Positions 26,546-64,000 of a stretch of DNA of 64,000 nucleotides are shown here, piece by piece (the stretch's first letter is position 1; each line of letters starts with the position of its first letter). The position numbers and the translations under genes are program-made. This DNA comes from Ostrea edulis (lineage: Eukaryota): assembly GCF_947568905.1 (NCBI RefSeq), contig NC_079169.1:2604001-2668000 (forward strand), given 5' to 3'. The notes under the pieces are model-generated. The model searched no databases, was not told the DNA's origin, and was given only the letters and a program-made list of their open reading frames with translations.

Positions 26546-27084
26546 CAATCTAAGCATAATATCCTAAGCACTATAAGTAGAATAATGGCTACTTGATGCC
26601 ATGTTGATCATCACCATCAGAGACCCGTCATGCACAGTACTAATTAGGTATTAAACCAGAAACATCAATGTCTGATCAGAACGAGATAAACCTGTCTGTC
26701 AACACGTTAGGTCACTCTCTGCCCTCTGGACATCAGTGGACAGAGCAGTCACAGTATACCCACATGTACTATACACAACTGCAACTGTAAAATGCTTCAG
26801 GTCTATGACAGTTTCTTATAGATATATCTTGTCATGTGTTAAGATATACATGTCAAATAACTCACGTCAAATTAGCCATATACAATATTAAGACCTAACC
26901 AGATTTCCAGTCATTACCAAAGTTTTGAAGACATGTATTGTCTTCTGTTTAATGAAGAGTAGAGCCTGGCCCTCTGTTTTCTCTCCTTGTCATATCTCTA
27001 TCTGGCTAAATCCCATTACAGCTTAATTCTGTTTACAAAAATGAAAATCCCGACGTATATTTAACAAGTCTTGAAGAGTACCAC

Positions 27085-27812
27085 AAACGGTACATAATAC
27101 GCCCGTGAAATGCTTACATAGGGTGTTTTTTTGTGCCATAATTTGTATAATTTTGCTTCAGGTAGTATCAGCCATTACGAGGCTGTGACAAACTTTCATA
27201 TGAACAAAGGGTCTTACCTTAAAAATCGAGATTTCCTCAAAATGGACCAAGTTCAACAACCTGTAATTTTTTCAAAAATGGAAGAAAATCAAATTCCTTC
27301 CCCAGATGCACATTTTCAATACCCATACAAACACTCCACAAGATAAGATGGTCCTCACTTGAAAACTGTGGGAGGAGTTGGGCGGACAAATTATGTACCC
27401 TCCATAGAATATTAATTTCCAAATAGACTAAGTTCAACAACCTGTAATTTTTTCAAAAATTGTAGAAAATCAAAATCCATCGCACATGCACATCTTCAAT
27501 ACCCATACAAACACTCCACAAAATAAAAAGGCTCTCACTTGAAAACTGTGGGAGGAGTAGGGCGGACAAATTACGTACCCTCCATATAATAATTATTTCC
27601 AAATAAAGGGGCAAAACTCCTGGAAAAAAGGTTGAAATGGATCAAAATTGCAGTATGATCTAGAGTGACCCACAAAGAAGCTACACAGCAAGTTTCAGCA
27701 TGATATGTGAAAGGGAAATGAAATTATAAAGAGAAAACCCCGAACGGACGGACGGCCTGACGTACAGACATCGCTGTAACATAATATGTTCCATCTAAAG
27801 ACGGGCGTATAA
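27085..27812 (+). mobile_element. Helentron-associated non-autonomous element (HINE)
   Basis: Subterminal inverted repeat ATACGCCCGT (27097-27106) / ACGGGCGTAT (27801-27810), internal ~180-bp tandem units, (GGAC)n microsatellite near the end. Its left ~110 bp recurs at 60175-60290. Confidence 0.75.
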
Positions 27813-37901: not shown

Positions 37902-38789
37902 TCATCTACATGTATACCTTGTAAACCTGTTAACAGCTACTTGTAGGCTTTAACATATAACATCCTCTACCTGATTTGGGGACAACTCCCATCATTTTAG
38001 GACGATTTCACAAATCAAAAGTCGAACACAGAAATGGTCATGCAATTAAACACCATGGTGCATCCCATGCAAAAACACATGTAGTGAAATAACTTTGCAT
38101 TGGCAAGTAAAATATTAATGGGTGTATATATTGATACATTTTCCAAAAAGTTCTGGTCTTGTCCATTGAAGTTTGACTTAAAAACCCAAATACTGCGCCA
38201 ATTTTCAACAGTTTACTTGGTCCATGTACCAGTGCAACATTCACAACTTTCACATAATCATCTTAATGTAGTAAGAAACTTATCATGGGTAAAAGGCAGT
38301 AAAAATGTTATAACAATAAAACATTGAGAAGATGCCTGAAGCACATAAACATGTGATCTTCAAAGACTTAATACAAATATCATAAAAGAAATTGACCTAA
38401 TACATGTACATGATTACGTTCAATAATACAGAGATTGAATGCACATATTTCGCACACAATCAAGTCTTAAGTGCACATCTTTCCTAAAATGTTTGCTAAA
38501 TTCTTAACACTGAGGTACCTTAATGTAGGTATATCAACACACATACTCTATAAAACATTAATCTGACCCTCCACTACAGCCTAGGGAAGTACTGTCTGAA
38601 TTTCAGTGAATATTGTTTTCATTTTGAAACCTTGTAACATGCTAAATGTTGACCATTGCCATTGGTATCATTCTACACTCAGAATGAATTGAAACTGATT
38701 CAGTATAAGTTCGTAACATACAGATGTCTTTCTGTCGGACATTGAATCATTGCTGAGGTTTACACCAACACATACTGTTTAGGCTTTTT

Positions 38790-48800: not shown

Positions 48801-49420
48801 GGTACAAAACTAATTGTGATCTTCTGGAATTATGTTTTTATTAAAATTGCCTTTTAATAGAATTCTTGACTGTAAAGACATTTTTAAAAATTAATTTCTC
48901 GAGGTACATTGTAAGCAGTGTTTTGTATAGAATGAATACATCTGTACATACAGCAAATTATATTATAATGAAGTGCTAGGTACAAGTGAAATTACTTCAT
49001 TATACACAAACTTCATTATGTACATTGTGTATAATGACTTATTGGCAATCCAACTAAAAAGTTTGCTATGCAAGAAATACTTTTAACTGAAAGCTTATTA
49101 ATTGCATTATTAAAAAAAAGAATAAATAATGTTTGTGTTTATTTCTTAGAGAAATCATGAATGGACGACTGCTTCCAGACTGAGGATTGTTTTCTCCACA
49201 TAGAGTCAATATCGACAATGCCTTATACATGTATATATTTCCATTCACTGCAATCTTTTCTCTTATGTTGCAATTGAAATTGACACTGCTTTCATCATAC
49301 ACTGAATACTTGTTTGTTGCAAACCAGTTCGATCTGGTTTTCTAGTACTACCTTTCTGCGAAATCATTACCAAATATTGGCAAACTTAATTCTAGTTTTT
49401 TGTTTTTTTTATAAATACAT

Positions 49421-50686
49421 AACAAGAGGCTGCCCACAGGCCTTAACAGTCACCTGAGTACTAGTGAAAAGTATCACTACTCCCAAGGGCTATGAAATCT
49501 AGAAGAAAAAATTCCAGTTCTGATTATCTAAGCTAAATTCTTATGACGTTGAAAGCAAGTTATAAAACAAGATCTGTTCTTAAAACTTCAATGCCCTCAA
49601 AAGTGCATACACGTACTGATGAAAGGCTTTATAATATAATATGCGCATCAACATTAAAAGATATGACTAATCTGAACCCATCCCAGGGTCAAAACTCTGG
49701 GTTGTGAAATTCACTATTTTTTGTACATCCCTTTCTGCTTTTCCTGATTATGCATTTAGATTTTATATCAGAGTATCAGCAAACTTAAAGACATCCTTCA
49801 AATTATTATAATTATTTTGACACTACCCTGAAACCAAACCCTTATCCCTGTAGGATCATGCAATTTACAATTTTGGTAATTAAAGGACTACCTACTCCTT
49901 CTAAATATCCACTTAGTTTCAATTCAGCATCCATAAACCTATAATGAAGGTGTTAATTAAATGTTTTACACATCAGTATTATGTACTAAGTCTGTCCCCA
50001 CCCTGGGGTCAAAACCCCTACCTCGGGGATCATTAAATTTACAATTTTGGTAGAGGCCTTCTGGCCTGCTCTACATCATTATGTATTTAGTTTTTCTTAA
50101 GATGTACAGTTCTAGAAAAGAAGATTTTTAAAATTGGTCAATTTTTGCTCTGACCCTAAGGCCTCAGGGGGTGCAGGCGTCCTGAAATTTTGATTCTATG
50201 CCCCCCTTGTTCCAAAGATGATTCATACCAAATTTGAAATGAATTTGAATGGTAGTTATCAAGAAGTTAAAAATCTCTATTTCTCACACATTTAATAACT
50301 GACCATTTTGGCCTTACCCTAATACCAAAACCTTCTCTTTCTAAATATCCATTTAGTTTCAATAGCACTAAAGATGTTATTTAAGTGTTTTACACATAAA
50401 CACTTAATATACAAATTTTTGCCCCACCTTGGGGTCAAAACCTCTACCCCGGGGATCATGAAATTTACAAGTTTGGTAGAGTCGTTTCTGCTCTATATCA
50501 CTTAGTTTTTCTTACACGTGCGGTTCTAGATTTTTGAAAATTTGGGCAGTTTTTGTCTCGACCCTAGGGGTGCTGGAATCCTAAAATTTACAATTTATGT
50601 CTCCTTTGTCAATTGTTAACGCAAGACGACGGACGACAACCAATTGCAATATATAATATAGGTCAGAGTTTACTCAGGTGACCTAA
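49421..50686 (-). mobile_element. HINE, copy A (copy B at 54830-56096; fragment at 61915-62344)
   Basis: AACAAGAGG..CCCACAGGCC end, subterminal inverted repeats GTCACCTGAGT / ACTCAGGTGAC, internal repeats with GGGGTCAAAACCCCTAC...GGGGATCAT, GACG microsatellite. Confidence 0.8.
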
Positions 50687-51040
50687 TTAAAACAATATCA
50701 ATTTGAAATTATAATACAAAATTTTATTCCTACTGTCATATAAATATATTCATGCATTGAACTATGTACAATATAACAAATTCATTAGTTAGAAAATATT
50801 TAACAAATTCATTTAGTTAGAAAACATTGAACAAATTCATTTAGTTAGAAAACATTGATCAATGAATGAAGTAATACTTATTTATAACAAATATTGTGTG
50901 GCAGCAAATCAACATGCAATACAGAAACAAAAACAAAGATAAAAATAGCACTATTTTACAGATCTAAATGAAACAGACCTCAAAAAGTCTACACAGAAGA
51001 TATAATCTATTAGCACTTTCCTCAGGATAAATAATTTACC

Positions 51041-51258
51041 AGCACTATACAAGCACCTCAGGATAAATAAATAACTTACCAGCACTATACAAGCACCTCA
51101 GGATAAATAAATAACTTACCAGCACTATACAAGCACCTCAGGATAAATAAATAACTTACCAGCACTATACAAGCACCTCAGGATAAATAAATAACTTACC
51201 AGCACTATACAAGCACCTCAGGATAAATAAATAACGTACCAGCACTATACAAGCACTA
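51041..51258. repeat. 40-bp repeat in 3'UTR of homeobox copy A (x~6; x~9 in copy B at 56449-56786)
   Basis: Unit AGCACTATACAAGCACCTCAGGATAAATAAATAACTTACC at 51041, 51081 ... 51241. Confidence 0.95.
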
Positions 51259-51339
51259 CGATTTCACAGGACAGTAACCAGAAGCAGGTCTGATATATCA
51301 TTAATCCCAGATTCTTTTTCCACACTAACATACTCACTA

Positions 51340-52638
51340 TCACCATTCACTGGGCACACACTTGTTAACACTGAGTGTTTTCCTCTTGCTGATCCCTAAT
51401 GAGCGTCTGCTTCTGTTCCTCTTGTTGGAGAACCATTTCTTCACCTGCTCCTCCTTGATTCCTCCTCTCACGGCTAGATTCTGGATGACATCAGATGGTG
51501 GGTGCGGGTGATCGAGATGACTGTAGTACCACTGCTCCATAAGCTGAACGGCCTTCTGGGATAGGGATGGTCTGGTCCGTAGGTTGTTCTGGCTGCAGGT
51601 CTGGTGCTGTGCTGTGGTGGTCATGTTGATGGTTGATGACTGCTGAGGTAGATTGTCCTCCAGGAACTGTAGACTGCTCTCCACTCGGTCCATGATGCGA
51701 TGATGGATGATGGTATAGTGTTGGTTGATGCTCTCTTGGATGTGGTGGGGCTGTCTGGAGTTCTGGTGAAGCGCACAGTAGCGATCAGTCTCCACTTGGG
51801 CACTCTGGTACTTAAAGAAGGATGTCAGGTCATTCATCTGCTGAGGATGGAAGGGACGAAGGCTGTCAAGTCTCTGCAGAAGCTGTCGTTCACGGCTGGC
51901 AGTGGACATCTCGGGTTGAATGGACTTGATGAGCACAGATGGAGTGTATGAACTGGCCTCTGAGCGGAAGATGGACTGAAGAGCACTGAAGATTTCGTTG
52001 GATGAGATGATGTTGTCACTGAAGTTTTTCTGTGGTATTGGAGGTGGTAGACACTTGAGAGCAAGCTGAAGTTCGTTGTCTGGAGATTTCTCTGGTGTGG
52101 GTTGGTCGCTGATGAGGGAAGCCAAGAACTCATCAAATCTGGTCTCTGCTTTGCTGGTATCAATGTCATTCTGGCTGGAAGATGAGATGTTGTTCTCTGA
52201 AAATTTCTCTGGTGTGGGTTGGTCGCTGATGAGAGAAGTCAGGCACTCATCAAATCTGGTCTCTGCTTTGCTGGTGTCGATGTCATTGTGGCTGGAGGAT
52301 GAGATGTTGTCTGGAGATTTCTCTGTTGTGGGTTGGTTGCTGATGAGGGAAGTCAGGCACTTGTCAAATCTGGTCTCTGCTTTGCTGGTGTCAATGTCAT
52401 TCTGGCTGGAGGATGAGATGTTGTCTGGAGAATTCTCTGGTGTGGGTTGGTTGCTGATGAGGGAAGTCGGGCACTTATCAAATCTGGTCTTTGCTTTGCT
52501 GGTGTCAATATTCTGGCTGGAGGTGGTGAGAGGCTGGGGTGTGGCTGGGGAATCGTCAAAGATGGTGGCCTTGATGATGTCCTCCAGCGTGGTATTAAAG
52601 TTGATCTCGATGTGGGGTGAAGAAGCACGATCAGCCAT
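51340..52638 (-). CDS. Divergent TALE-class homeobox transcription factor, copy A (spiralian-specific SPILE-like), 432 aa, intronless CDS
   Basis: C-terminal homeodomain RTRPSLSQKAVQLMEQWYYSHLDHPHPPSDVIQNLAVRGGIKEEQVKKWFSNKRNRSRR with the three-residue loop extension and WFxN; upstream helical block QQMNDLTSFFKYQSAQVETDRY...INQHY...IMDRVESSLQFLE; four 38-aa N-terminal repeats. Confidence 0.9.
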   Translation of the reverse strand: MADRASSPHIEINFNTTLEDIIKATIFDDSPATPQPLTTSSQNIDTSKAKTRFDKCPTSLISNQPTPENSPDNISSSSQNDIDTSKAETRFDKCLTSLISNQPTTEKSPDNISSSSHNDIDTSKAETRFDECLTSLISDQPTPEKFSENNISSSSQNDIDTSKAETRFDEFLASLISDQPTPEKSPDNELQLALKCLPPPIPQKNFSDNIISSNEIFSALQSIFRSEASSYTPSVLIKSIQPEMSTASRERQLLQRLDSLRPFHPQQMNDLTSFFKYQSAQVETDRYCALHQNSRQPHHIQESINQHYTIIHHRIMDRVESSLQFLEDNLPQQSSTINMTTTAQHQTCSQNNLRTRPSLSQKAVQLMEQWYYSHLDHPHPPSDVIQNLAVRGGIKEEQVKKWFSNKRNRSRRSLGISKRKTLSVNKCVPSEW

Positions 52639-52926
52639 GATGAATCACGATATACACAACACAAAGCACTAACACCTAAACATACTAAAATACAAAATCA
52701 CTCAACACAACATATACACTATTACTTACAATGTACAGACAATATGACTGCAGGTAAGCAACACAGAAAGAACACAAATTCACAAAAACAAGGAATGAAT
52801 TCAATAGGTGCAAAATGTAGAATTTATTGCTCCAATGAATTAGGCAATCTATAGGATTATATCAGCTCTCTGATACCTCAGACTGGATCACAATATGTGA
52901 ATAGTTGAAATTCAATAGCAAGGGGC

Positions 52927-53540
52927 TTTTTATAGACACAAAGTTCTGCTACAATTCAGCTTGGATTGCAAACAAAGATGTTCATTGGTCATGAGGTGTT
53001 TCCATCAGTTGTGATTGGTTGATGAATCCAATTATTTAACAAGCTAAGTTGGGACTGGCTGGTTTTGCATCATTGACCACACCTTTCCTTGGTCTGAGAA
53101 ATCAGCTTGGGGTCATTAGGGATAGCTTGGGTGTGGTCACCTTGTGGTGTGGGGATCAAAGTAAGCAGCTGGTTACTAATTGATCATAATTAATACTGGA
53201 GACCTACAGATCAAAGGGAAAGACCGTTCTCTGATTGGTCATAGTTAATACTCTACAGAGGGGATGAAATTAAGTGATAAACAGATCTATAATGGGTCAC
53301 ACTAAATGGTCAATCAAAGTGATAAGCTTGTTGCTGGTAAGCCATTATTTCAAACACAATATGTAACAGATCAAAGTGAGAAGATGATCTAATTAGTGCA
53401 CAGATCAAAGTGAGAAGATGATCTAATTAATGCACAGATCAAAGTGAGAAGATGGTCTAATTAGTGCACAGATCAAAGTGAGAAGATGGTCTAATAAGTG
53501 CACAGATCAAAGTGAAAATATATGGTCTTTGACTAATCCT
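52927..53540 (-). promoter_or_regulatory. TATA + multi-CCAAT promoter and TCF/LEF-site array of homeobox copy A
   Basis: Minus-strand TATAAAAA at 52934-52927; CCAAT boxes at 52984, 53014, 53028, 53234; ATCAAAG at 53155, 53210, 53313 and in 34-bp repeats (AGATCAAAG at 53368, 53402, 53436, 53470, 53504). Confidence 0.65.
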
Positions 53541-53754
53541 AATTAGTGCACAAGGACTACCAGATCAAATTGCAAAGCTGGTACTAGTGTGATAAGCCTA
53601 TACATAAGCCAAAACAGAATAGATAAAAAAAACAACAATTAGTTTACTTTCAAAACTTTATAAAAATATAATATACTAAAAGAATTTAATATGATATTTT
53701 AAACATTTCTCCTAATTTATTGTTTATCAATAGTAAATCAGGTTATATTTTTAT

Positions 53755-54808
53755 TGAGAATTGTGTACTGATAGTACTGTGAGAATTGTGTACTGATGGT
53801 ACTGTGAGAATTGTGTACTGATAGTACTGTGAGAATTGTGTACTGATAGTACTGTGAGAATTGTGTACTGATGGTACTGTGAGAATTGTGTACTGATAGT
53901 ACTGTGAGAATTGTGTACTGATGGTACTGTGAGAATTGTGTACTGATGGTACAGTGAGAATTGTGTACTGATGGTACTGTGAGAATTGTGTACTAATGGT
54001 ACTGTGAGAATTGTGTACTAATGGTACAGTGAGAATTGTGTACTGATGGTACAGTGAGAATTGTGTACTGATGGTACTGTGAGAATTGTGTACTAATGGT
54101 ACAGTGAGAATTGTGTACTGATAGTACTGTGAGAATTGTGTACTGATGGTACAGTGAGAATTGTGTAATGATGGTACTGTGAGAATTGTGTACTGATGGT
54201 ACTGTGAGAATTGTGTACTGATGGTACTGTGAGAATTGTGTACTGATAGTACTGTGAGAATTGTGTACTGATGGTACTGTGAGAATTGTGTACTGATGGT
54301 ACTGTGAGAATTGTGTACTGATGGTACTGTGAGAATTGTGTACTGATGGTACTGTGAGAATTGTGTACTGATAGTACTGTGAGAATTGTGTACTGATAGT
54401 ACTGTGTACTGATAGTACTGTGAGAATTGTGTACTGATGGTACTGTGAGAATTGTGTACTGATGGTACTGTGAGAATTGTGTAATGATGGTACTGTGAGA
54501 ATTGTGTACTGATGGTACTGTGAGAATTGTGTACTGATAGTACTGTGAGAATTGTGTACTGATGGTACTGTGAGAATTGTGTACTGATGGTACTGTGAGA
54601 ATTGTGTACTGATGGTACTGTGAGAATTGTGTACTGATGGTACTGTGAGAATTGTGTACTGATAGTACTGTGAGAATTATGTACTGATAGTACTGTGAGA
54701 ATTCTGTACTGAGAGTACTGTGAGAATTGTGTACTGATAGTACTGTGAGAATTGTGTACTGATGGTACTGTGAGAATTGTGTAATGATAGTACTGTGAGA
54801 ATTGTGAG
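53755..54808. repeat. 25-bp satellite x~42 (copy B: 59365-59945, x~23)
   Basis: Unit GTACTGTGAGAATTGTGTACTGAT(G/A); stop-free on the minus strand, producing the spurious 367-aa ORF. Confidence 0.97.
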
Positions 54809-54829
54809 AATTTTTTTTTATAAATACAT

Positions 54830-56096
54830 AACAAGAGGCTGCCCACAGGCCTTAACAGTCACCTGAGTACTAGTGAAAAGTATCACTACTCCCAAGGGCT
54901 ATGAAATCTAGAAGAAAAAATTCCAGTTTTGATTATCTAAGCTAAATTCTTATGATGTTGAAAGCAAGTTATAAAACAAGATCTGTTCTTAAAACTTCAA
55001 TGCCCTCAAAAGTGCATACACATACTGATGAAAGGCTTTATAATATAATATGCGCATCAACATTACAAGAAATGACTAATCTGAACCCATCCCAGGGTCA
55101 AAACTCTGGGTTGTGAAATTCACCATTTTTTGTACATCCCTTTCTGCTTTTCCTGATTATGCATTTAGATTTTATATCAGAGTATCAGCAAACTTAAAGA
55201 CGTCCTTCAAATTATTATAATTATTTTGACACTACCCTGAAACCAAACCCTTATCCCTATAGGATCATGCAATTTACAATTTTGGTAATTAAAGGACTAC
55301 CTATACTCCTAAATATCCACTTAGTTTCAATTCAGCATCCATAAACCTATAATGAAGGTGTTAATTAAATGTTTTACACATCAGTATTATGTACTAAGTC
55401 TGTCCCCACCCTGGGGTCAAAACCCCTACCTCGGGGATCATTAAATTTACAATTTTGGTAGAGGCCTTCTGGCCTGCTCTACATCATTATGTATTTAGTT
55501 TTTCTTAAGATGTACAGTTCTAGAAAAGAAGATTTTTAAAATTGGTCAATTTTTGCTCTGACCCTAAGGCCTCAGGGGGTGCAGGCGTCCTGAAATTTTG
55601 ATTCTATGCCCCCCTTGTTCCAAAGATGATTCATACCAAATTTGAAATGAATTTGAATGGTAGTTATCAAGAAGTTAAAAATCTCTATTTCTCACACATT
55701 TAATAACTGACCATTTTGGCCTTACCCTAATACCAAAACCTTCTCTTTCTAAATATCCATTTAGTTTCAATAGCACTAAAGATGTTATTTAAGTGTTTTA
55801 CACATAAACACTTAATATACAAATTTTTGCCCCACCTTGGGGTCAAAACCTCTACCCCGGGGATCATGAAATTTACAAGTTTGGTAGAGTCGTTTCTGCT
55901 CTATATCACTTAGTTTTTCTTACACGTGCGGTTCTAGATTTTTGAAAATTTGGGCAGTTTTTGTCTCGACCCTAGGGGTGCTGGAATCCTAAAATTTACA
56001 ATTTATGTCTCCTTTGTCAATTGTTAACGCAAGACGACGGACGACAACCAATTGCAATATATAATATAGGTCAGAGTTTACTCAGGTGACCTAATT
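54830..56096 (-). mobile_element. HINE, copy B
   Basis: Nearly identical to 49421-50686. Confidence 0.8.
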
Positions 56097-56867
56097 AAAA
56101 CAATATCAATTTGAAATTATAATACAAAATTTTATTCCTACTGTCATATAAATATATTCATGCATTGAACTATGTACAATATAACAAATTCATTAGTTAG
56201 AAAAAATTTAACAAATTCATTTAGTTACAAAACATTGAACAAATTCATTTAGTTAGAAAACATTGATCAATGAATGAAGTAATACTTATTTATAACAAAT
56301 ATTGTGTGGCAGCAAATCAACATGCAATACAGAAACAAAAACAAAGATAAAAATAGCACTATTTTACAGATCTAAATGAAACAGACCTCAAAAAGTCTAC
56401 ACAGAAGATATAATCTATTAGCACTTTCCTCAGGATAAATAATTTACCAGCACTATACAAGCACCTCAGGATAAATAAATAACATACTAGCACTATACAA
56501 GCACCTCTGGATAAATAAATAACTTACCAGCACTATACAAGCACCTCAGGATAAATAAATAATTTACCAGCACTATACAAGCACCTCAGGATAAATAAAT
56601 AACTTACCAGCACTATACAAGCACCTCAGGATAAATAAATAACTTACTAGCACTATACAAGCACCTCAGGATAAATAAATAACTTACCAGCACTATACAA
56701 GCACCTCAGGATAAATAAATAACTTACTAGCACTATACAAGCACCTCAGGATAAATAAATAACGTACCAGCACTATACAAGCACTACGATTTCACAGGAC
56801 AGTAACCAGAAGCAGGTCCGATATATCATTAATCCCAGATTCTTTTTCCACACTAACATACTCACTA

Positions 56868-58280
56868 TCACCATTCACTGGGCACACACTTGTTAACACT
56901 GAGTGTTTTCCTCTTGCTGATCCCTAATGAGCGTCTGCTTCTGTTCCTCTTGTTGGAGAACCATTTCTTCACCTGCTCCTCCTTGATTCCTCCTCTCACG
57001 GCTAGATTCTGGATGACATCAGATGGTGGGTGCGGGTGATCGAGATGACTGTAGTACCACTGCTCCATAAGCTGAACGGCCTTCTGGGATAGCGATGGTC
57101 TGGTGCGTAGGTTGTTCTGGCTGCAGGTCTGGTGCTGTGCTGTGGTGGTCATGTTGATGATTGATGACTGCTGAGGTAGATTGTCCTCCAGGAACTGTAA
57201 ACTGCTCTCCACTCGGTCCATGATGCGATGATGGATGATGGTGTAGTGTTGGTTGATGCTCTCTTGGATGTGGTGGGGCTGGCTGAGGTTCTGGTGAAGG
57301 GCACAGTAGCGATCAGTCTCCACTTGGGCACTCTGGTATTTAAAGAAGGATGTCAGGTCATTCATCTGCTGAGGATGGAAGGGACGAAGGCTGTCAAGTC
57401 TCTGCAGAAGCTGTCGTTCACGGCTGGCAGTGGACATCTCGGGTTGAATGGACTTGATGAGCACAGATGGAGTGTATGAACTGGCCTCTGAGCGGAAGAT
57501 GGACTGAAGAGCACTGAAGATTTCGTTGGATGAGATGATGTTGTCACTGAAGTTTTTCTGTGGTATTGGAGGTGGTAGACACTTGAGAGCAAGCTGAAGT
57601 TCGTTGTCTGGAGATTTCTCTGGTGTGGGTTGGTCGCTGATGAGGGAAGCCAAGAACTCATCAAATCTGGTCTCTGCTTTGCTGGTATCAATGTCATTCT
57701 GGCTGGAAGATGAGATGTTGTTCTCTGAAAATTTCTCTGGTGTGGGTTGGTCGCTGATGAGAGAAGTCAGGCACTTGTCAAATCTGGTCTCTGCTTTGCT
57801 GGTGTCGATGTCATTGTGGCTGGAGGATGAGATGTTGTCTGGAGATTTCTCTGGTGTGGGTTGGTCGCTGATGAGGGAAGTCAGGCACTTGTCAAATCTG
57901 GTCTCTGCTTTGCTGGTGTCGATGTCATTCTGGCTGGAGGATGAGATGTTGTCTGAAAATTTCTCTGGTGTGGGTTGGTCGCTGATGAGAGAAGTCAGGC
58001 ACTCATCAAATCTGGTCTCTGCTTTGCTGGTGTCGATGTCATTGTAGCTGGAGGATGAGATGTTGTCTGGAGAATTCTCTGGTGTGGGTTGGTTGCTGAT
58101 GAGGGAAGTCGGGCACTTATCAAATCTGGTCTTTGCTTTGCTGGTGTCAATATTCTGGCTGGAGGTGGTGAGAGGCTGGGGTGTGGCTGGGGAATCGTCA
58201 AAGATGGTGGCCTTGATGATGTCCTCCAGCGTGGTATTAAAGTTGATCTCGATGTGGGGTGAAGAAGCACGATCAGCCAT
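56868..58280 (-). CDS. Divergent TALE-class homeobox transcription factor, copy B, 470 aa, intronless CDS
   Basis: Homeodomain protein sequence identical to copy A; five 38-aa repeats rather than four; NSR/NLS and T/I differences in the middle region. Confidence 0.9.
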   Translation of the reverse strand: MADRASSPHIEINFNTTLEDIIKATIFDDSPATPQPLTTSSQNIDTSKAKTRFDKCPTSLISNQPTPENSPDNISSSSYNDIDTSKAETRFDECLTSLISDQPTPEKFSDNISSSSQNDIDTSKAETRFDKCLTSLISDQPTPEKSPDNISSSSHNDIDTSKAETRFDKCLTSLISDQPTPEKFSENNISSSSQNDIDTSKAETRFDEFLASLISDQPTPEKSPDNELQLALKCLPPPIPQKNFSDNIISSNEIFSALQSIFRSEASSYTPSVLIKSIQPEMSTASRERQLLQRLDSLRPFHPQQMNDLTSFFKYQSAQVETDRYCALHQNLSQPHHIQESINQHYTIIHHRIMDRVESSLQFLEDNLPQQSSIINMTTTAQHQTCSQNNLRTRPSLSQKAVQLMEQWYYSHLDHPHPPSDVIQNLAVRGGIKEEQVKKWFSNKRNRSRRSLGISKRKTLSVNKCVPSEW

Positions 58281-58568
58281 GATGAATCACGATATACACA
58301 ACACAAAGCACTAACACCTAAACACACTAAATCACAAAATCACTCAACACAACATATACACTATTACTTACAATGTACAGACAATATGACTGCAGGTAAG
58401 CAACACAGAAAGAACACAAATTCACAAAAACAAAGAATGAATTCAATAGGTGTAAAATGTAGAATTTATTGCTCCAATGAATTAGGCAATCTATAGGATT
58501 ATATCAGCTCTCTGATACCTCAGACTGGATCACAATATGTGAATAGTTGAAATTCAATAGCAAGGGGC

Positions 58569-59135
58569 TTTTTATAGACACAAAGTTCTGCTACAATTCA
58601 GCTTGGATTGCAAACAAAGATGTTCATTGGTCATGAGGTGTTTCCATCAGTTGTGATTGGTTGATGAATCCAATTATTTAACAAGCTAAGTTGGGACTGG
58701 CTGGTTTTGCATCATTGACCACACCTTTCCTTGGTCTGAGAAATCAGCTTGGGGTTATTAGGGATAGCTTGGGTGTGGTCACCTTGTGGTGTGGGTATCA
58801 AAGTAAGCAGCTGGTTACTAATTGATCATAATTAATACTGGAGACCTACAGATCAAAGGGAAAGACCGTTCTCTGATTGGTCATAGTTAATACTCTACAG
58901 AGGGGATGAAATTAAGTGATAAACAGATCTATAATGGGTCACACTAAATGGCCAATCAAAGTGATAAGCTTGTTGCTGGTAAGCCTTTATTTCAAACACA
59001 ATATGTAACAGATCAAAGTGAGAAGATGATCTAATTAGTGCTCAGATCAAAGTGAGAAGATGATCTAATTAATGCACAGATCAAAGTGAGAAGATGGTCT
59101 AATAAGTGCACAGATCAAAGTGAGAATATATGGTC
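58569..59135 (-). promoter_or_regulatory. TATA + multi-CCAAT promoter and TCF/LEF-site array of homeobox copy B
   Basis: TATAAAAA at 58576-58569; AGATCAAAGGG at 58850; 34-bp repeat with AGATCAAAG at 59010, 59044, 59078, 59112. Confidence 0.65.
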
Positions 59136-59364
59136 TTTGACTAATCCTACTTAGTGCACAAGGAGTACCAGATCAAATTGCAAAGTTGGTACTAGTGTGA
59201 TAAGCCTATACATAAGCCAAAACAGAATAGATAAAAAAAAAAACAACAATTAGTTTACATTCAAAACTTTATAAAAATATAATATACTAAAAGAATCTAA
59301 CATGATATTTTAAACATTTCTCCTAATTTATTGTTTATCAATAGTAAATCAGGTTATATTTTTA

Positions 59365-59945
59365 TTGAGAATTGTGTACTGATAGTACTGTGAGAATTGT
59401 GTTTGTGTACTGATGGTACTGTGAGAATTGTGTACTGATAGTACTGTGAGAATTGTGTACTGATAGTACTGTGAGAATTGTGTACTAATGGTACTGTGAG
59501 AATTGTGTACTGATGGCACTGTGAGAATTGTGTACTGATGGCACTGTGAGAATTGTGTACTGATAGTACAGTACTGTGAGAATTGTGTACTGATAGTACT
59601 GTGAGAATTGTGTACTGATAGTACTGTGAGAATTGTGTACTGGTGGTACTGTGAGAATTGTGTACTGATAGTACTGTGAGAATTGTGTACTGATAGTACT
59701 GTGAGAATTGTGTAGTGATAGTACTGTGAGAATTGTGTACTGATAGTACTGTGAGAATTGTGTACTGATAGTACTGTGAGAATTGTGTACTGATGGTACT
59801 GTGAGAATTGTGTACTGATAGTACTGTGAGAATTGTGTACTGATAGTACTATGAGAATTGTGTACTGATAGTACTGTGAGAATTGTGTAGTGATGGTACT
59901 GTGAGAATTGTGTAGTGATGGTATTGTGAGAATTGTATAGTGAGT
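59365..59945. repeat. 25-bp satellite, copy B; end of the duplicated unit
   Basis: Same unit as 53755-54808, decaying into unique sequence at ~59945. Confidence 0.95.
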
Positions 59946-60560
59946 TTATTTGTTATCAGAAAAATGTTCTATGATCATTTACAGTTTTTTGAATGTAAGA
60001 GATTAGCCCAACCTCTATAATAAATGGAAGCAAGAATTAACTGTACATGGAGATGTTATTTCAATACAAGGTATTCTTAAAGTATGTTCTAAGATAATAA
60101 CTGATCCTTCTGTTCAATGATTGCAATTTAGAATATTACAAAGAATGGGACATTACTTTTAAACAATAGTACTGCAAATGGTACATAATATGCCCGTGAA
60201 AATGCTTACATAGGGTGTTTTTCTTATGCGATAATTTGTAGAATTTTGCTTCAGGTAGTATCAGCCATCATCAGGCTGTAACATACTTTCTTTGCATCAA
60301 ATAAATAAAGGGTCTTATTCAGAGAGAGAGAATTAAAGATCATCAATAATAAAGGACCATGTCTTTCAGTTGGTATTGAAATCTATAATTTTATGTTTTA
60401 TATGCAATTTGCTTTAAAGTTCTTAACATTAAAGTTCTCTTTATTTCATTTATCAGACTATTCATGGATAGGCTATTTTTTAAATATAGTGCATAAATTT
60501 ATGAGCTTTAACCAAATTCTAAATTATCAAAATGCTCATTTGAACTTCGATGCAAAAACT

Positions 60561-61385
60561 AACAAGATGTACTGTGATCAATGCTCACAAAGAATACCCC
60601 CCGCTTACCCTAATCTCCCAAAGGGTGTTGTTAATAGGTATAAATTACCTCTTTCCTGAGTGTAAAAATATGGTATGCCTTTGTAGAAGAAAATGGAAGA
60701 TATAGTCCGAACACAAATCCATGGCATAAACCTATAATTTTGACCTTGAGATCAAAGGTCAAAGTCATAAAGAGGTCATGAATGTACATGACACAAAGTC
60801 TCATGGTGATACACCCATGTCTTATGGTATGACTATGTCAAAACCCTATAATCAATTTTGACCTTGAGGTCAAAGTTCAAGGTCATATAGAGGTCATGAA
60901 GGTACTCAACACATCGTCTCATGGTGATACACTCATGTGTCAAATATGATATGTCTATGTCAAAGAACAAAGAAGTCATGGCCCTGACACGAATCCATTG
61001 TAAAAACCTTTAATTTTGACCTTGAGGTCAAGGTCATATGGATGTCATGAAGGTACATGACACATCGTCTCATGGTGATACACTCAGGTGTCAAATATGG
61101 TATGCCTATGTCAAAGAACAAAAAAGTTATGGCCCGGACACGAATCCATTGTAAAAACCTTTAATTTTGACCTTGAGGTCAAGGGTCAAGGTCATATAGA
61201 GGTCATGAAGGTACTCGACACATCGTCTCATGGTGATCTACCTGTGTGCCAAATATGGTATGCCTAAGTCAAAGAACAAAGAAGTTATGGCCCAGACAAA
61301 AATCTGCACAGACAGATGGACGGATGCAGAAAGACAGACAGAGTGATTCCTATATACCCCCCAGAACTTCGTTCGGGAGATATAA
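60561..61385 (+). mobile_element. HINE with internal tandem units
   Basis: AACAAGATGTACTGTGATC start; repeats of TTGACCTTGAGGTCAA...GAGGTCATGAA...CGTCTCATGGTGATACAC...ATGTCAAAGAACAA; GACA/GGAC tail; GATTCCTATATACCCCCC..TTCG..GGGAGATATAA end. Confidence 0.8.
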
Positions 61386-61642
61386 GATAGGCAGAATGAG
61401 CATACCCAAAAATGATTTACACTATAAGTGTAAACCAAAAACCCAAGGTACTCCACAGAAAGCTTTACTACATTAAAATTTAAAGAGAATGCAAAATATT
61501 TTTACTTCACCGTGTAACGTAAATCATAAAAAATATGACGTCACAATTAAATGACGTCGCAGCAGTGTGAGATAAAAAAAAAATCTTCACATACCGGTCT
61601 CACATGGCTAAAGTCGATCTCACACTGGTGATAATGTGAGAA

Positions 61643-61914
61643 AACATCATCTCATCCAACAAAATCTTCATTGCTCTTCAGTCCATCTTCCACTCTGAGG
61701 CCAGTTCATACATTCCATCTGTGCTTATTAGGTGCATCCAGCCCGAGATGTCCACCATGAACGACATCTGGAGAGACTCGACAGCCCTCGTTCCTTCCAC
61801 CTCCGCAGATGAATGACCTAACATCCTTCTTTAAGTACCAGAGTGGAGACTGATCGCAACTGTGCCCTTCATCAGAACTCCAACCCGCCCCACCACATCC
61901 AAGAGAGCATCAAC
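61643..61914 (+). pseudogene. Inverted, frameshifted fragment of the TALE homeobox gene (NIISSNEIF...QESIN segment)
   Basis: AACATCATCTCATCCAACAAAATCTTCATTGCTCTTCAGTCCATCTTCC...CCACCACATCCAAGAGAGCATCAAC aligns by eye to the coding strand of copies A and B, with 7-, 3-, 1- and 8-nt deletions; no ORF in the supplied track. Confidence 0.88.
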
Positions 61915-62344
61915 TATGTCTGCTATTCCTAAGTATGCATTTAGTTCTATAGATTCAGCAAACTTACACATAAATACTACAACTTAAGTTTGGCCACACC
62001 CTGGGGTCAGAACCCCTACTCTGGAGATCATGAAATTTACAATTTTGGTAGAGGCCTTCCTGCTCTTCATCACCAGGCATTTACTTTTTCTTTTAACATG
62101 TGCGGTTCTAAAGAAAAAGATATTTTAAAATTGGTCAATTGGGGCAGTTTTTGCCCTACCCCTAAGGCCCCAGGAATCCTGAAATTTATAATTTATGTCC
62201 CCCTTGTTCCAAAAATGCTTCATACCAAATTTGAAAGGAATTGGAAGTTATCAAGAAGTTAAAAATGTTCAATTGGTAACGCACGACGATGGATGACAAC
62301 CAATTGCAAAAGGTCACCTAAGTCAACTCAGGCGACCTTAAAAT
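61915..62344 (-). mobile_element. HINE fragment, same family as 49421-50686
   Basis: CACCCTGGGGTCAGAACCCCTACTCTGGAGATCATGAAATTTACAATTTTGGTAGAGGCCTTC...CAACCAATTGCAAAAGGTCACC...ACTCAGGCGACC. Confidence 0.75.
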
Positions 62345-62402: not shown

Positions 62403-64000
62403 AAACAAGAGATGTTTGTAAAACACATATGCCCCCCCCCCCCCCCCCAATGGTGCAAAATTGAAAAGGGTTATACACACACACATCATTTAATTGATAG
62501 TAGTATCATCAATTCAAAATATTGAGCAGACAATATCTTCCTATGTCAAGAGTGAATTGACCATGTGACCTAAATAACAATATGGGTCATCTACTCCTTA
62601 TGCTGTACCAGTGTACCAAGTTTGGTGTTAATCAAGCAAACAATTCTTAAAATATAGGAAACAAGATATTACTATGTCCAGTTCAACAATTGACTTTTAA
62701 CCTCAAAATCAATATGGGTTGTCTTCTCCTGAAAATGTACCAGTGTACTAAGTTTGATGTCCGTCAAGCAAAAATGTTATCAAGATATTGAGTGGACAGT
62801 ATATTACTATGTTCAGTTTGACCTTTGACCATGTGACCTCAAAATCAATAGGAGTCATCTCCTCCTGAATATACACCACTGTACTTAGTTTGATGTCTGT
62901 CAAGCAAAGGGTTCTCAAAATATTGAGCGGACAGTATATTCCAATGTCCAGGTTGACCCTTGACCTTTAAACATGTGAAATCAAAATCAATAGGGATCAT
63001 CTTCTCCTGAAGATGTACCAGTGTACCAAGTTTGATGTCTGTCAAGCAAAGGGTTCTCAAGATATTGAACGGACAGTATATTCTTATGTCCAGTTTGACC
63101 CTTGACCTTGACCATGTGACCTCAAAATCAATAGGGGTCATCTTCTCCTGAAGACGTACCAGTGTACCAAGTTTGATGTCTGTCAAGCAAAGGGTTCTCA
63201 AGATATTGAGCGGACAGTATATTCCTATGTCCAGTTTGACCCTTGACGTTTGACCATGTGACCACCTCAAAATCACTAGGGGTTATCTTCTCCTAGAGAC
63301 GTACCAGTGTACCAAGTTTGATGTCTGTCGAGCAAAGGGTTCTCAAGATATTGAGCGGACAGTATATTCCTATGTCCAGTTTGACCCTTGACCATGTGAC
63401 CTCAAAATCAATAGGGGTCATCTTCTCTTGAAGACGTACCAGTGTACCAAGTTTGATGTCTGTCAAGCAAAGGGTTCTCAAGATATTGAGCGGACAGTAT
63501 ATTTCCATGTCTAGTTTGACCCTTGACCTTTGATCATGTGACCTCAAAATCAATAGGAGTCATCTTCCCCTTAAGATATACCAGTGTACTAAGTTTGATG
63601 TCTGTCAAGCAAAGGGTTCTCAAGATATTGAGCAGACATTATATTCTTAAGTCCAGTTTGACCCTTGACCATGTGACCTCAAAATCAATAGGGGTCATCT
63701 TCTCTTGAAGATGTACCAGTGTACCAAGTTTGATGTCTGTCAAGCAAAGGGTTCTCAAGATATTGAGCGGACAGTATATTCCTATGTCTAGTTTGACCCT
63801 TGACCATGTGACCTCAAAATCAATGGGGGTCATCTTCTTCTGAAGATGTACTGGCGTACCAAGTTTGATGTCTGTCAAGCAAAGGGTTCTCTAGACATTG
63901 AATGGTCAGTATATTCCTATGCCCAGTTTGACCCTTGACCTTTGACCATGTGACCTCAAAATCAATAGGGGTCATCTACTCCTTAGGATGTACCAGTTTG
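62403..64000 (+). mobile_element. HINE with internal ~120-125-bp satellite array running off the window
   Basis: AAACAAGAGATGTTTGTAAAACAC..GCCCCC start, then about a dozen units TGACCATGTGACCTCAAAATCAATAGGGGTCATCTTCTCCTGAAGATGTACCAGTGTACCAAGTTTGATGTCTGTCAAGCAAAGGGTTCTCAAGATATTGAGCGGACAG. Confidence 0.85.

What the first reader, a model, noticed from the sequence alone, without database searches (positions are those of the whole stretch)
49400..59945. Young 5.4-kb tandem duplication of a complete intronless TALE homeobox transcription unit
Seen: two colinear units (offset 5409 bp), each with HINE, 3'UTR, CDS, promoter and 25-bp satellite. Both ORFs are intact. Outside the coding repeats I count six synonymous differences (cgg/cgc, tcc/tcg, cta/tta, tat/tac, gcg/gcc, aag/aaa) against two amino-acid-changing sites (SR/LS, T/I), and the homeodomain is unchanged. 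The junction at ~54810 fuses the satellite directly to the poly-T left of the HINE, so it is not at an element terminus. Established: lophotrochozoans have lineage-specific TALE expansions. Inference: birth-and-death expansion caught in progress, with purifying selection on both copies.
Basis: partly seen in the sequence, partly recalled or inferred. Interest (0 to 1): 0.72.

Follow-up and report, generated by a model that had tools for sequence, protein, structure and literature searches.

The report
Young tandem duplicate of oyster SPILE homeobox gene
Two near-identical head-to-tail copies of a mollusc-specific embryonic-type homeobox gene sit side by side in the flat oyster genome; this is a recent step in an oyster-lineage gene-family expansion of a kind already known in molluscs.

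Summary
Window 49403-54811 and 54812-59945 are two colinear units, 1.09% diverged (46 substitutions plus four indels). Each carries a Helentron-like HINE, an AATAAA signal, an intact single-ORF TALE homeobox gene, TATA and CCAAT boxes, a 34-bp TCF-like site array and a 25-bp satellite.

The genome is Ostrea edulis. RefSeq already lists the copies as LOC130047056 and LOC130047057. They are co-orthologues of Crassostrea Cgi_TALE12/13-type PADRE-domain SPILE genes, not PBX, MEIS, IRX or TGIF.

They are two of at least nine intact, Ostrea-specific paralogues in three clusters. Two of those clusters also hold young tandem arrays.

The junction lies 18 bp outside the HINE terminus with at most 2 bp of microhomology, so the join was non-homologous and not transposon-mediated.

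Caveats:
- Divergence equals the published heterozygosity (1.02%) and is patchy.
- Contigs from three other oysters show a third haplotype, so the A/B differences are not fixed.
- All amino-acid changes fall on copy B, so purifying selection is shown only for copy A.
- Independent read support for the junction and any expression evidence could not be obtained.

This is a new member of a known kind.

The parts
49403..54811 (.). Tandem unit A (5409 bp)
54812..59945 (.). Tandem unit B (5134 bp). Its right end lies inside the satellite, which runs into ancestral flank at 59945.
54795..54829 (.). Novel duplication junction: the last satellite letters (GAGAATT), then a T-run and ATAAATACAT (an 18-bp stub of old flank), then the HINE. 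Microhomology is at most 1-2 T.
49421..50693 (+). HINE-A, a Helentron-like non-autonomous element. It has a 5' end AACAAGAGG, a subTIR at 49449-49461, an internal repeat of about 430 bp and a 3' palindrome at 50661-50683.
   Evidence: PMC7492417 for HINE anatomy
54830..56101 (+). HINE-B, 99% identical to HINE-A, so it was present before the duplication.
50723..50728 (-). AATAAA signal of gene A, 614 nt after the stop and just outside the HINE. The copy-B equivalent is at 56131-56136.
   Evidence: motif only; use not shown
51020..51256 (.). 40-bp repeat array in the 3' UTR: 6 copies in A and 9 copies in B (56428-56784).
51340..52638 (-). CDS A, 432 aa (RefSeq LOC130047056). Homeodomain 51403-51579, PADRE region 51655-51903, four 38-aa repeat units 52075-52523.
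56868..58280 (-). CDS B, 470 aa (RefSeq LOC130047057). Homeodomain 56931-57107, five 38-aa repeat units 57603-58165. Carries S294L, R295S and T336I relative to A.
52929..52988 (-). TATAAA (52929-52934) and CCAAT (52984-52988), 296 and about 350 nt upstream of the ATG of A. The same motifs in B are at 58571-58576 and 58626-58630.
   Evidence: motifs only
53366..53515 (.). 34-bp repeat array, each unit with AGATCAAAG (a TCF/LEF-like core). Five sites in A and four in B (59008-59126). Present in all nine paralogues.
53624..54806 (.). 25-bp satellite of unit A (about 45 monomers). It is locus-specific.
59246..59945 (.). 25-bp satellite of unit B. Its dominant monomer variant differs from that of A.
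59946..60273 (.). Ancestral upstream flank. It is homologous to the sequence that follows a single 25-bp monomer at paralogue C5:88443359.
61640..61914 (+). Decayed, inverted fragment of a third family member (aa 207-305), 83-86% identical, with stops and frameshifts.

Best explanation
This is a real and recent DNA-level tandem duplication in Ostrea edulis (chromosome C6, 2.65 Mb). It copied a 5.4-kb segment that holds one complete gene for a PADRE-domain SPILE (spiralian TALE) homeodomain transcription factor.

Inferred order of events:
1. An Ostrea-specific burst spread the gene, with about 1 kb of promoter, to three loci.
2. At this locus a HINE inserted just beyond the poly(A) signal, and a single 25-bp motif upstream of the promoter grew into a satellite.
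3. A non-homologous join (at most 2 bp of microhomology) between the satellite and a T-run 18 bp left of the HINE produced two head-to-tail units.

The copies now differ by 1.1%, by tandem-repeat copy numbers (3' UTR 6 v 9, coding 4 v 5, promoter sites 5 v 4) and by three amino acids, all in copy B.

By homology with Crassostrea Cgi_TALE12/13 and with limpet and mussel SPILE genes, the proteins most likely act as sequence-specific DNA-binding factors in cleavage-stage embryos. That functional step is inferred, not shown.
For: Duplication and anatomy:
- The units, ORFs, junction and motifs are documented.
- The gene is a TALE homeodomain by Pfam.
- Its homeodomain aligns without gaps to the 63-aa PBX1/Exd homeodomain (E=1e-11). 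The AlphaFold homeodomain matches Exd at rmsd 0.8-2 A.

Family placement:
- The proteins are 66-70% identical over their full length to oyster orthologues, including M. gigas K1RAG1, which carries the literal PADRE sequence.
- The C-terminal QVKK and VPCFW-type tail matches Cgi_TALE12/13 in the PADRE figure of PMC5322547.

Expansion:
- Nine intact paralogues are present, and they are monophyletic against Crassostrea and Saccostrea with 100/100 support.
- Other young arrays exist: the C6b pair is 96.9% identical and the C5 11.1-kb triple is 98.4-99.2% identical.

Pre-duplication architecture:
- Paralogue C5:88443359 has no HINE, one 25-bp monomer, and then the homologue of window 59933-60273.
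- The satellite occurs only at this locus.
- HINE-A and HINE-B are 99% identical, while HINEs at the other loci are only 78-84% identical.

Selection:
- Outside the repeats there are 6 synonymous v 4 non-synonymous nucleotide changes, omega 0.17, P=0.007.

Assembly and annotation:
- The window has no gaps.
- The junction shares no sequence on which an assembler could overlap two alleles (inference).
- RefSeq annotates two adjacent genes.
Against: - No independent read evidence for the junction was obtained. Only Logan contigs were available, none of the listed pieces bridges 54811/54812, and the one raw-read run gave no cover.
- A-B divergence (1.09%) equals the published heterozygosity of 1.02%.
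- Contigs of three other individuals show a single third haplotype at the A/B-differing CDS sites. This would also fit two alleles, or a duplication that is not fixed.
- Divergence is patchy: 0 substitutions in 897 bp (P=0.0006) and 10 in 247 bp (scan P=0.03). Simple clock-like divergence after one event is therefore not the whole story.
- No RNA run holds the stretch, so expression and function are inferred only.
Confidence: 0.78

Rival explanations
1. Assembly artefact: A and B are the two alleles of a single-copy locus in the sequenced animal, wrongly laid head to tail.
For: - Divergence of 1.09% equals the published heterozygosity of 1.02%.
- The A/B differences are not fixed. Other individuals show one state per site and a third haplotype.
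- The units differ in tandem-repeat copy number, as alleles often do.
Against: - There is no gap or N at the junction.
- The junction joins satellite to a T-run with at most 2 bp in common, so an overlap-based assembler has nothing on which to join two alleles.
- The same family forms tandem arrays at two other loci at 96.9-99.2% identity.
- RefSeq carries both genes.
Confidence: 0.08
2. An older tandem pair kept similar by gene conversion or unequal crossing-over (concerted evolution), rather than a recent birth.
For: - Divergence is patchy: an 897-bp block is identical beside blocks of 2-4%.
- In all three clusters the local copies are each other's closest relatives.
- The satellite arrays of A and B have different dominant monomers.
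Against: - Colinearity covers the whole 5.4 kb, including the HINE, UTR repeats and satellite, with no old, strongly diverged segment. The maximum is about 4% over 250 bp.
- HINEs between copies at C6b are independent insertions (78-84% identity, inserted at a different site). The arrangement of gene, HINE, gene is therefore not an inherited array.
- No sampled paralogue could have donated the clustered differences.
Confidence: 0.1
3. Transposon-driven copy: rolling-circle read-through of the Helentron-like HINE captured the gene and produced the tandem. A variant is a retrocopy ending in the A-run on the gene strand.
For: - The HINE's 3' palindrome faces the gene, so read-through would run into it.
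- The unit ends in an A-run on the gene strand.
- Helitrons are known to capture genes (PMC7492417 discussion).
Against: - The unit begins 18 bp outside the HINE 5' terminus, which was defined from five other copies.
- The unit includes promoter and upstream satellite, which a retrocopy would lack.
- Paralogue C5:88443359 shares the 3' region, gene, promoter and far flank without any HINE.
- Other paralogues carry no such composite element.
Confidence: 0.02

Closest known systems
Cgi_TALE12 / Cgi_TALE13 (Crassostrea gigas PADRE-box TALE clade of Paps et al. 2015, PMC5322547); SPILE A/C clade of Phuangphong et al. 2021 (PMC8524836)
   Same: - Co-linear protein, 66-70% identical to the oyster orthologues.
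- PADRE region followed by a 63-aa TALE homeodomain.
- QVKK motif, WFSNKRNR and a similar C-terminal tail.
- Hits are restricted to bivalves.
   Different: - The Ostrea copies carry 3-5 tandem 38-aa units where the Crassostrea and Saccostrea proteins have one.
- The two window copies have PHP in place of the PYP loop.
- There are nine copies rather than one or two per species.
Lineage-specific tandem arrays of near-identical SPILE-A/C homeoboxes in Lottia (LgTALEHD21, 22, 29-34), chiton, abalone and Chrysomallon (PMC8524836)
   Same: Recent local tandem duplication of SPILE-A/C genes, with almost identical homeodomains.
   Different: - Here the full unit, breakpoints and pre-duplication state are resolved.
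- The species is a bivalve, where that paper found most A/C genes not in tandem.
PBX/Extradenticle (PBC family)
   Same: It is the nearest solved homeodomain: gapless, 33-37% identity, E=1e-11, and the predicted fold matches at rmsd 0.8-2 A.
   Different: No PBC domain was detected. The upstream domain is PADRE. The protein is not a PBX orthologue.
Cg_HINE / Pearl Helentron non-autonomous elements of oysters (PMC7492417)
   Same: The element beside each gene has a subterminal inverted repeat, a 3' palindrome, internal repeats, T-rich insertion sites and more than 10,000 first-look candidates.
   Different: It is a passenger of the duplication, not its cause. The 25-bp satellite is not part of it and is locus-specific.

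Membership tests
TALE-class homeodomain | Homeodomain of 63 aa with three extra residues between helices 1 and 2 | tested here: met
   Pfam Homeobox_KN scores 34.7 bits against a cut-off of 24. The alignment to the PBX1/Exd TALE homeodomain is gapless. The predicted fold matches Exd with TM 0.78-0.92.
TALE-class homeodomain | Conserved P-Y-P in the loop extension | tested here: not met
   Both window copies read HPHPPS. The seven other paralogues and all orthologues read HPYP. The loop length is kept, so this is a variant rather than an exclusion.
SPILE A/C clade / PADRE-box TALE clade (Paps VI-VII) | PADRE region of about 90 aa directly upstream of the homeodomain | tested here: met
   The region aligns with K1RAG1 and the C. 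virginica protein, which carry the literal PADRE sequence. It is predicted as three long helices with pLDDT above 90. The domain is described in PMC5322547.
SPILE A/C clade / PADRE-box TALE clade (Paps VI-VII) | QVKK motif in helix 3 and orthology to Cgi_TALE12/13 | tested here: met
   EEQVKKWFSNKRNR occurs in the supplementary PADRE figure in the Cgi_TALE12/13 rows. The tree groups the Ostrea copies with the Crassostrea and Saccostrea orthologues.
SPILE A/C clade / PADRE-box TALE clade (Paps VI-VII) | Expression in egg or cleavage stages | not testable with these tools
   No RNA run holds the stretch.
PBX (PBC) / MEIS-PKNOX | PBC-A/B or MEINOX domain N-terminal to the homeodomain | tested here: not met
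   No such Pfam family was found at E up to 0.1 in either protein.
Tandem segmental duplication | Head-to-tail colinear copies with one novel junction and the ancestral flank only at the outer ends | tested here: met
   The ancestral state is seen at paralogue C5:88443359.
Tandem segmental duplication | Junction supported by reads independent of the assembly | tested here: inconclusive
   Contigs of three individuals and one raw-read run do not resolve 54811/54812.
HINE (non-autonomous Helentron) | 5' subTIR, 3' subTIR with palindrome, central repeats, T-rich target and no TSD | tested here: met
   The subTIR GTCACCTGAGTAC and the terminal palindrome were seen in six copies. An internal repeat of about 430 bp is present. 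Flanks are T-rich. Copy number is high. The microsatellite module was not examined.

The most novel reading that the evidence does not exclude
The duplicate may be a very recent, still-segregating copy-number variant born by an unequal, non-homologous exchange between two different haplotypes. That would explain why its 'divergence' equals heterozygosity. It would sit inside an Ostrea-specific burst of a cleavage-stage transcription factor family that is changing in three ways: a coding minisatellite (1 to 3-5 units, possibly spliced out through a GC-AG exitron), the number of TCF-like promoter sites, and even the TALE hallmark loop (PYP to PHP). It also shows a 250-bp patch of clustered, mostly coding-strand C>T changes. 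This would be a natural experiment on how early-embryo regulators are born and diverge.
Probability: 0.2. Interest if true: 0.55.

Novelty: new member of a known kind. Interest (0 to 1): 0.35.

Why it matters
SPILE/TALE genes specify blastomere fates in spiralian embryos, and their lineage-specific duplication has been proposed to underlie changes in bivalve cleavage patterns (PMC8524836). This locus gives a base-pair-resolved example of how such a gene is copied with its whole regulatory unit. The ancestral state is preserved at a paralogous locus, and the first differences are visible: promoter site number, coding repeat number, and three residues in one copy.

It also shows that O. edulis has a nine-copy burst of one SPILE orthologue. 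That is useful for evo-devo work on a brooding oyster, and for annotators, because RefSeq currently models both genes with an unverified in-frame intron.

It does not reveal a new kind of system.

Tried and rejected
1. Helentron rolling-circle origin. The HINE 5' end, defined from five other copies, lies 18 bp inside the unit boundary, so this was rejected.
2. Retrocopy. The unit contains promoter and upstream satellite, and paralogues share promoter DNA. Rejected.
3. Gene conversion from a sampled paralogue as the source of the 10-substitution cluster. The derived states are private to A or to B and no paralogue carries them. No donor was found.
4. HINE between copies as evidence of an inherited array shared with the C6b pair. 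HINE identity is 78-84% against 90-91% for adjacent gene DNA, and the insertion site differs. Rejected.
5. Junction in public reads. Read laying returned only contigs, with no listed piece across the junction. Raw-read run X21 covered only HINE repeats. Inconclusive.
6. Junction pattern in JGI metagenome contigs: 0 matches.
7. The look-up of encoding contigs, to look for an independent O. edulis assembly, was closed.
9. Foldseek of the PADRE plus homeodomain model. Only the homeodomain matched PDB entries, and nothing matched the PADRE helices.
10. The large profile search (search of protein representatives) was not used, because the family was already identified.
Full report
OBSERVATION

Direct-repeat finding and self-BLAST show two colinear units, 49403-54811 and 54812-59945. 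A global alignment of the 4.2 kb between the unit start and the satellite has 46 substitutions (1.09%). It also has indels of 1, 120, 114 and 34 bp. The last three are whole units of a 40-bp 3' repeat, a 114-bp coding repeat and a 34-bp promoter repeat.

Both minus-strand ORFs are intact: A is 51340-52638 (432 aa) and B is 56868-58280 (470 aa). Each matches Pfam Homeobox_KN and Homeodomain above the curated cut-offs. It adds two synonymous and four non-synonymous codon differences plus one extra 38-aa unit inside the coding repeats. The window has no N.

ANATOMY OF A UNIT

Reading left to right on the + strand (the gene is on the - strand), each unit contains:
- An 18-bp stub of old flank: a T-run followed by ATAAATACAT.
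- A 1.27-kb interspersed element.
- An AATAAA signal 614 nt beyond the stop codon.
- A 28-bp repeat and a 40-bp repeat.
- The CDS.
- A TATAAA 296 nt and a CCAAT about 350 nt upstream of the ATG.
- A 34-bp repeat array in which each unit holds AGATCAAAG. There are 14 matches in the window against 1.25 expected. The array itself has five sites in A and four in B, and each copy has one further site about 160 bp nearer the gene (53208 and 58850).
- A 25-bp satellite.

The promoter and poly(A) elements are motif matches only. Their use is not shown.

The interspersed element has more than 10,000 first-look candidates in the genome. Its copies begin at AACAAGAGG. It has a subterminal inverted repeat (GTCACCTGAGTAC), an internal repeat of about 430 bp and a terminal palindrome. 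This is the anatomy described for oyster HINE/Helentron non-autonomous elements (PMC7492417).

THE JUNCTION

In unit B the satellite ends in GAGAATT and runs straight into the T-run, ATAAATACAT and the HINE. Unit A has the same T-run preceded by unrelated flank. Five other HINE copies share nothing left of AACAAGAGG. The junction therefore lies 18 bp outside the element, with at most one or two T of microhomology. This rules out rolling-circle read-through from the HINE and points to a non-homologous join.

WHAT THE GENE IS

The word-indexed protein search shows the organism is Ostrea edulis. The best hit lies on a contig of 93,534,300 bp, which is the window's contig C6. RefSeq already lists two adjacent genes, LOC130047056 and LOC130047057. 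Each is modelled as 325 aa by removing an in-frame GC-AG 'intron' of 321 bp (A) or 435 bp (B) that spans all but the last coding repeat. I could not test that intron. The ORFs are continuous without it.

Full-length orthologues of 308-318 aa, 66-70% identical, occur in Crassostrea, Magallana and Saccostrea. More distant relatives occur only in other bivalves. The M. gigas and C. virginica proteins contain the literal PADRE sequence. The helix-3 motif EEQVKKWFSNKRNR and the C-terminal tail match the Cgi_TALE12/13 rows of the PADRE-box figure of Paps et al. 2015. In the later nomenclature this clade is the PADRE-bearing SPILE A/C clade.

The homeodomain aligns without gaps to the 63-aa PBX1/Exd TALE homeodomain (E=1e-11). 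An AlphaFold model places three long, confident helices (the PADRE region), a disordered linker and a homeodomain that superposes on Exd. No PBC or MEINOX domain is detected.

One oddity: both window copies read PHP where all other paralogues and orthologues have the TALE hallmark PYP.

FAMILY CONTEXT

A six-frame search of the whole genome finds nine intact close paralogues (83-93% identity) in three clusters:
- This pair, C6a.
- A second pair on the same chromosome at 70.7 Mb, C6b.
- Five copies on C5 at 88.44-88.49 Mb.

All have 3-5 copies of the 38-aa unit, which is single in other oysters. In a maximum-likelihood tree the nine copies are monophyletic against the Crassostrea and Saccostrea orthologues (100/100), and A and B are sisters on a long stem. 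The burst is therefore Ostrea-specific.

Tandem duplication is a habit of the family. The C6b units are 96.9% identical. Three 11.1-kb units on C5 are 98.4-99.2% identical. A decayed, inverted fragment (aa 207-305, with stops and frameshifts, about 15% diverged) lies 1.7 kb to the right of unit B. This supplies the 'death' half of birth-and-death.

ORDER OF EVENTS

Paralogue C5:88443359 shares with the window the 3' region from exactly the right end of the HINE (50690), the CDS and the promoter. It then has a single 25-bp monomer, followed by the homologue of window 59933-60273. It has no HINE.

The satellite at 88% identity or more exists only at this locus. HINE-A and HINE-B are 99% identical, whereas HINEs near the other paralogues are 78-84% identical, like random genomic copies, and sit at a different site.

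It follows that HINE insertion and satellite growth happened first, and that the tandem duplication came later, with one breakpoint inside the satellite. This order is an inference from parsimony.

SELECTION

Over the 237 non-repeat C-terminal codons, Nei-Gojobori counts give 6 synonymous and 4 non-synonymous nucleotide differences: dS 0.042, dN 0.007, omega 0.17, Fisher P=0.007.

I polarised the changes with the paralogues and with a third haplotype seen in other animals. The four changes on A are all synonymous (P=0.002). B carries two synonymous and four non-synonymous changes, giving omega about 0.5 and P=0.6. Constraint is thus demonstrated for A and for the family as a whole (omega 0.14-0.5 between paralogues), but not for B on its own. 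Across the whole CDS, omega is about 0.3.

IS THE DUPLICATION REAL, AND HOW YOUNG IS IT?

Public runs: twenty of the 24 listed rows hold part of the stretch, and they come from ten studies. All of these holders are Logan contigs and none is on record as RNA.

I laid three individuals from three studies and one raw-read run on 54700-58330. None of the listed pieces bridges the junction, and the raw-read run covered only HINE repeats. The junction therefore remains supported only by the assembly.

The contigs did show something else. Across 57094-57342, all three animals carry one locus-specific haplotype. In X1 it continues into the C6a-type homeodomain. It matches none of the reference paralogues. 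It has the ancestral state at every A/B-differing site, and also at three sites where A and B agree. So the A/B differences are not fixed paralogue markers, and A and B are each other's closest relatives.

Three further facts bear on age:
- A-B divergence (1.09%) equals the published heterozygosity of 1.02% (PMC9679249).
- Divergence is patchy: none in 897 bp (P=0.0006) and ten substitutions in 247 bp (scan P=0.03).
- Thirteen sites vary within 250 bp among the three haplotypes, and none vary in 370 bp of flanks. Six of the thirteen are C>T on the coding strand.

These facts fit a duplication born from two different haplotypes, later exchange between copies, or, less likely, two alleles mis-laid in tandem. 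I rate the artefact at about 8%, for three reasons. The sequence is gap-free. The junction offers no overlap on which an assembler could join alleles. And the family demonstrably forms tandem arrays elsewhere.

HOW IT LIKELY WORKS

Shown: each copy is a complete, intact gene for a TALE homeodomain protein with a PADRE helical domain, with identical core-promoter motifs.

Inferred from the literature:
- Cgi_TALE7-14 peak from egg to blastula in the Pacific oyster (PMC5322547).
- SPILE A/C genes start zygotic expression at the 4-16-cell stage and mark quartets or quadrants in limpet and mussel (PMC8524836).

The duplicates most likely act as early-embryo DNA-binding regulators. The duplication would raise dosage and provide raw material for divergence. 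The first visible differences are promoter-site number, coding-repeat number and three residues in the PADRE region and the linker of copy B.

NOVELTY

Lineage-specific, near-identical tandem SPILE-A/C arrays are already described in limpet, chiton, abalone and a vent snail. Expanded homeobox orthogroups in O. edulis have been reported in bulk. This is a new, well-resolved member of a known kind and not a new kind of system.

LIMITS

- No RNA data were available.

Noticed in passing
window 61640-61914 (+), with a HINE fragment at 61919-62343: A decayed inverted fragment of a third family member (aa 207-305, with stops and frameshifts, 83-86% identical to all paralogues) lies directly beside a HINE piece.
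   Followed up: partly
window 52197-52517 (A) and 57725-58159 (B), minus strand: RefSeq models XP_055997215 and XP_055997216 remove an in-frame GC...AG 'intron' covering all but the last 38-aa repeat, which gives 325-aa proteins from both copies. It may be a real exitron or a modelling artefact. This is untested.
   Followed up: partly
window 51489-51497 (A) and 57017-57025 (B), homeodomain loop: Both copies have PHP instead of the TALE hallmark PYP. The seven other Ostrea paralogues and all Crassostrea and Saccostrea orthologues keep PYP.
   Followed up: partly
window 57093-57342 (= 51565-51814 in A): Thirteen variable sites lie within 250 bp among haplotypes A, B and a third haplotype seen in three other oysters. 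There are none in the 370 bp of flanks. Six are C>T on the coding strand. The cause is unknown.
   Followed up: partly
G000:C5:88458000-88484000 (L035-L037): Three 11.1-kb tandem units, 98.4-99.2% identical, each carry a 524-aa family member whose N-terminus (MADRASSPHIEINF...) is itself partly duplicated in frame.
   Followed up: partly
G000:C6:70716111-70722165 (L031-L032): A second tandem pair (unit about 4.77 kb, 96.9% identical) shows 0 synonymous and 5 non-synonymous differences in the C-terminal 237 codons.
   Followed up: no
window 53624-54806 and 59246-59945; L033 around 9600-9650: The 25-bp satellite is confined to this locus. It corresponds to a single monomer at paralogue C5:88443359, so it appears to have been born in place.
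   Followed up: yes
window 60854-61298 and 62432-63997: A 151-bp tandem repeat and a longer array of about 140-bp repeats. The latter is about 80% similar to arrays inside the C5 cluster (C5 block 26875-27492 and 38031-38645).
   Followed up: no
window 49900-50797: An 897-bp stretch (two thirds of the HINE plus the poly(A) region) is identical between the units, while the first 500 bp of the unit is 2% diverged. This suggests exchange between the copies.
   Followed up: partly
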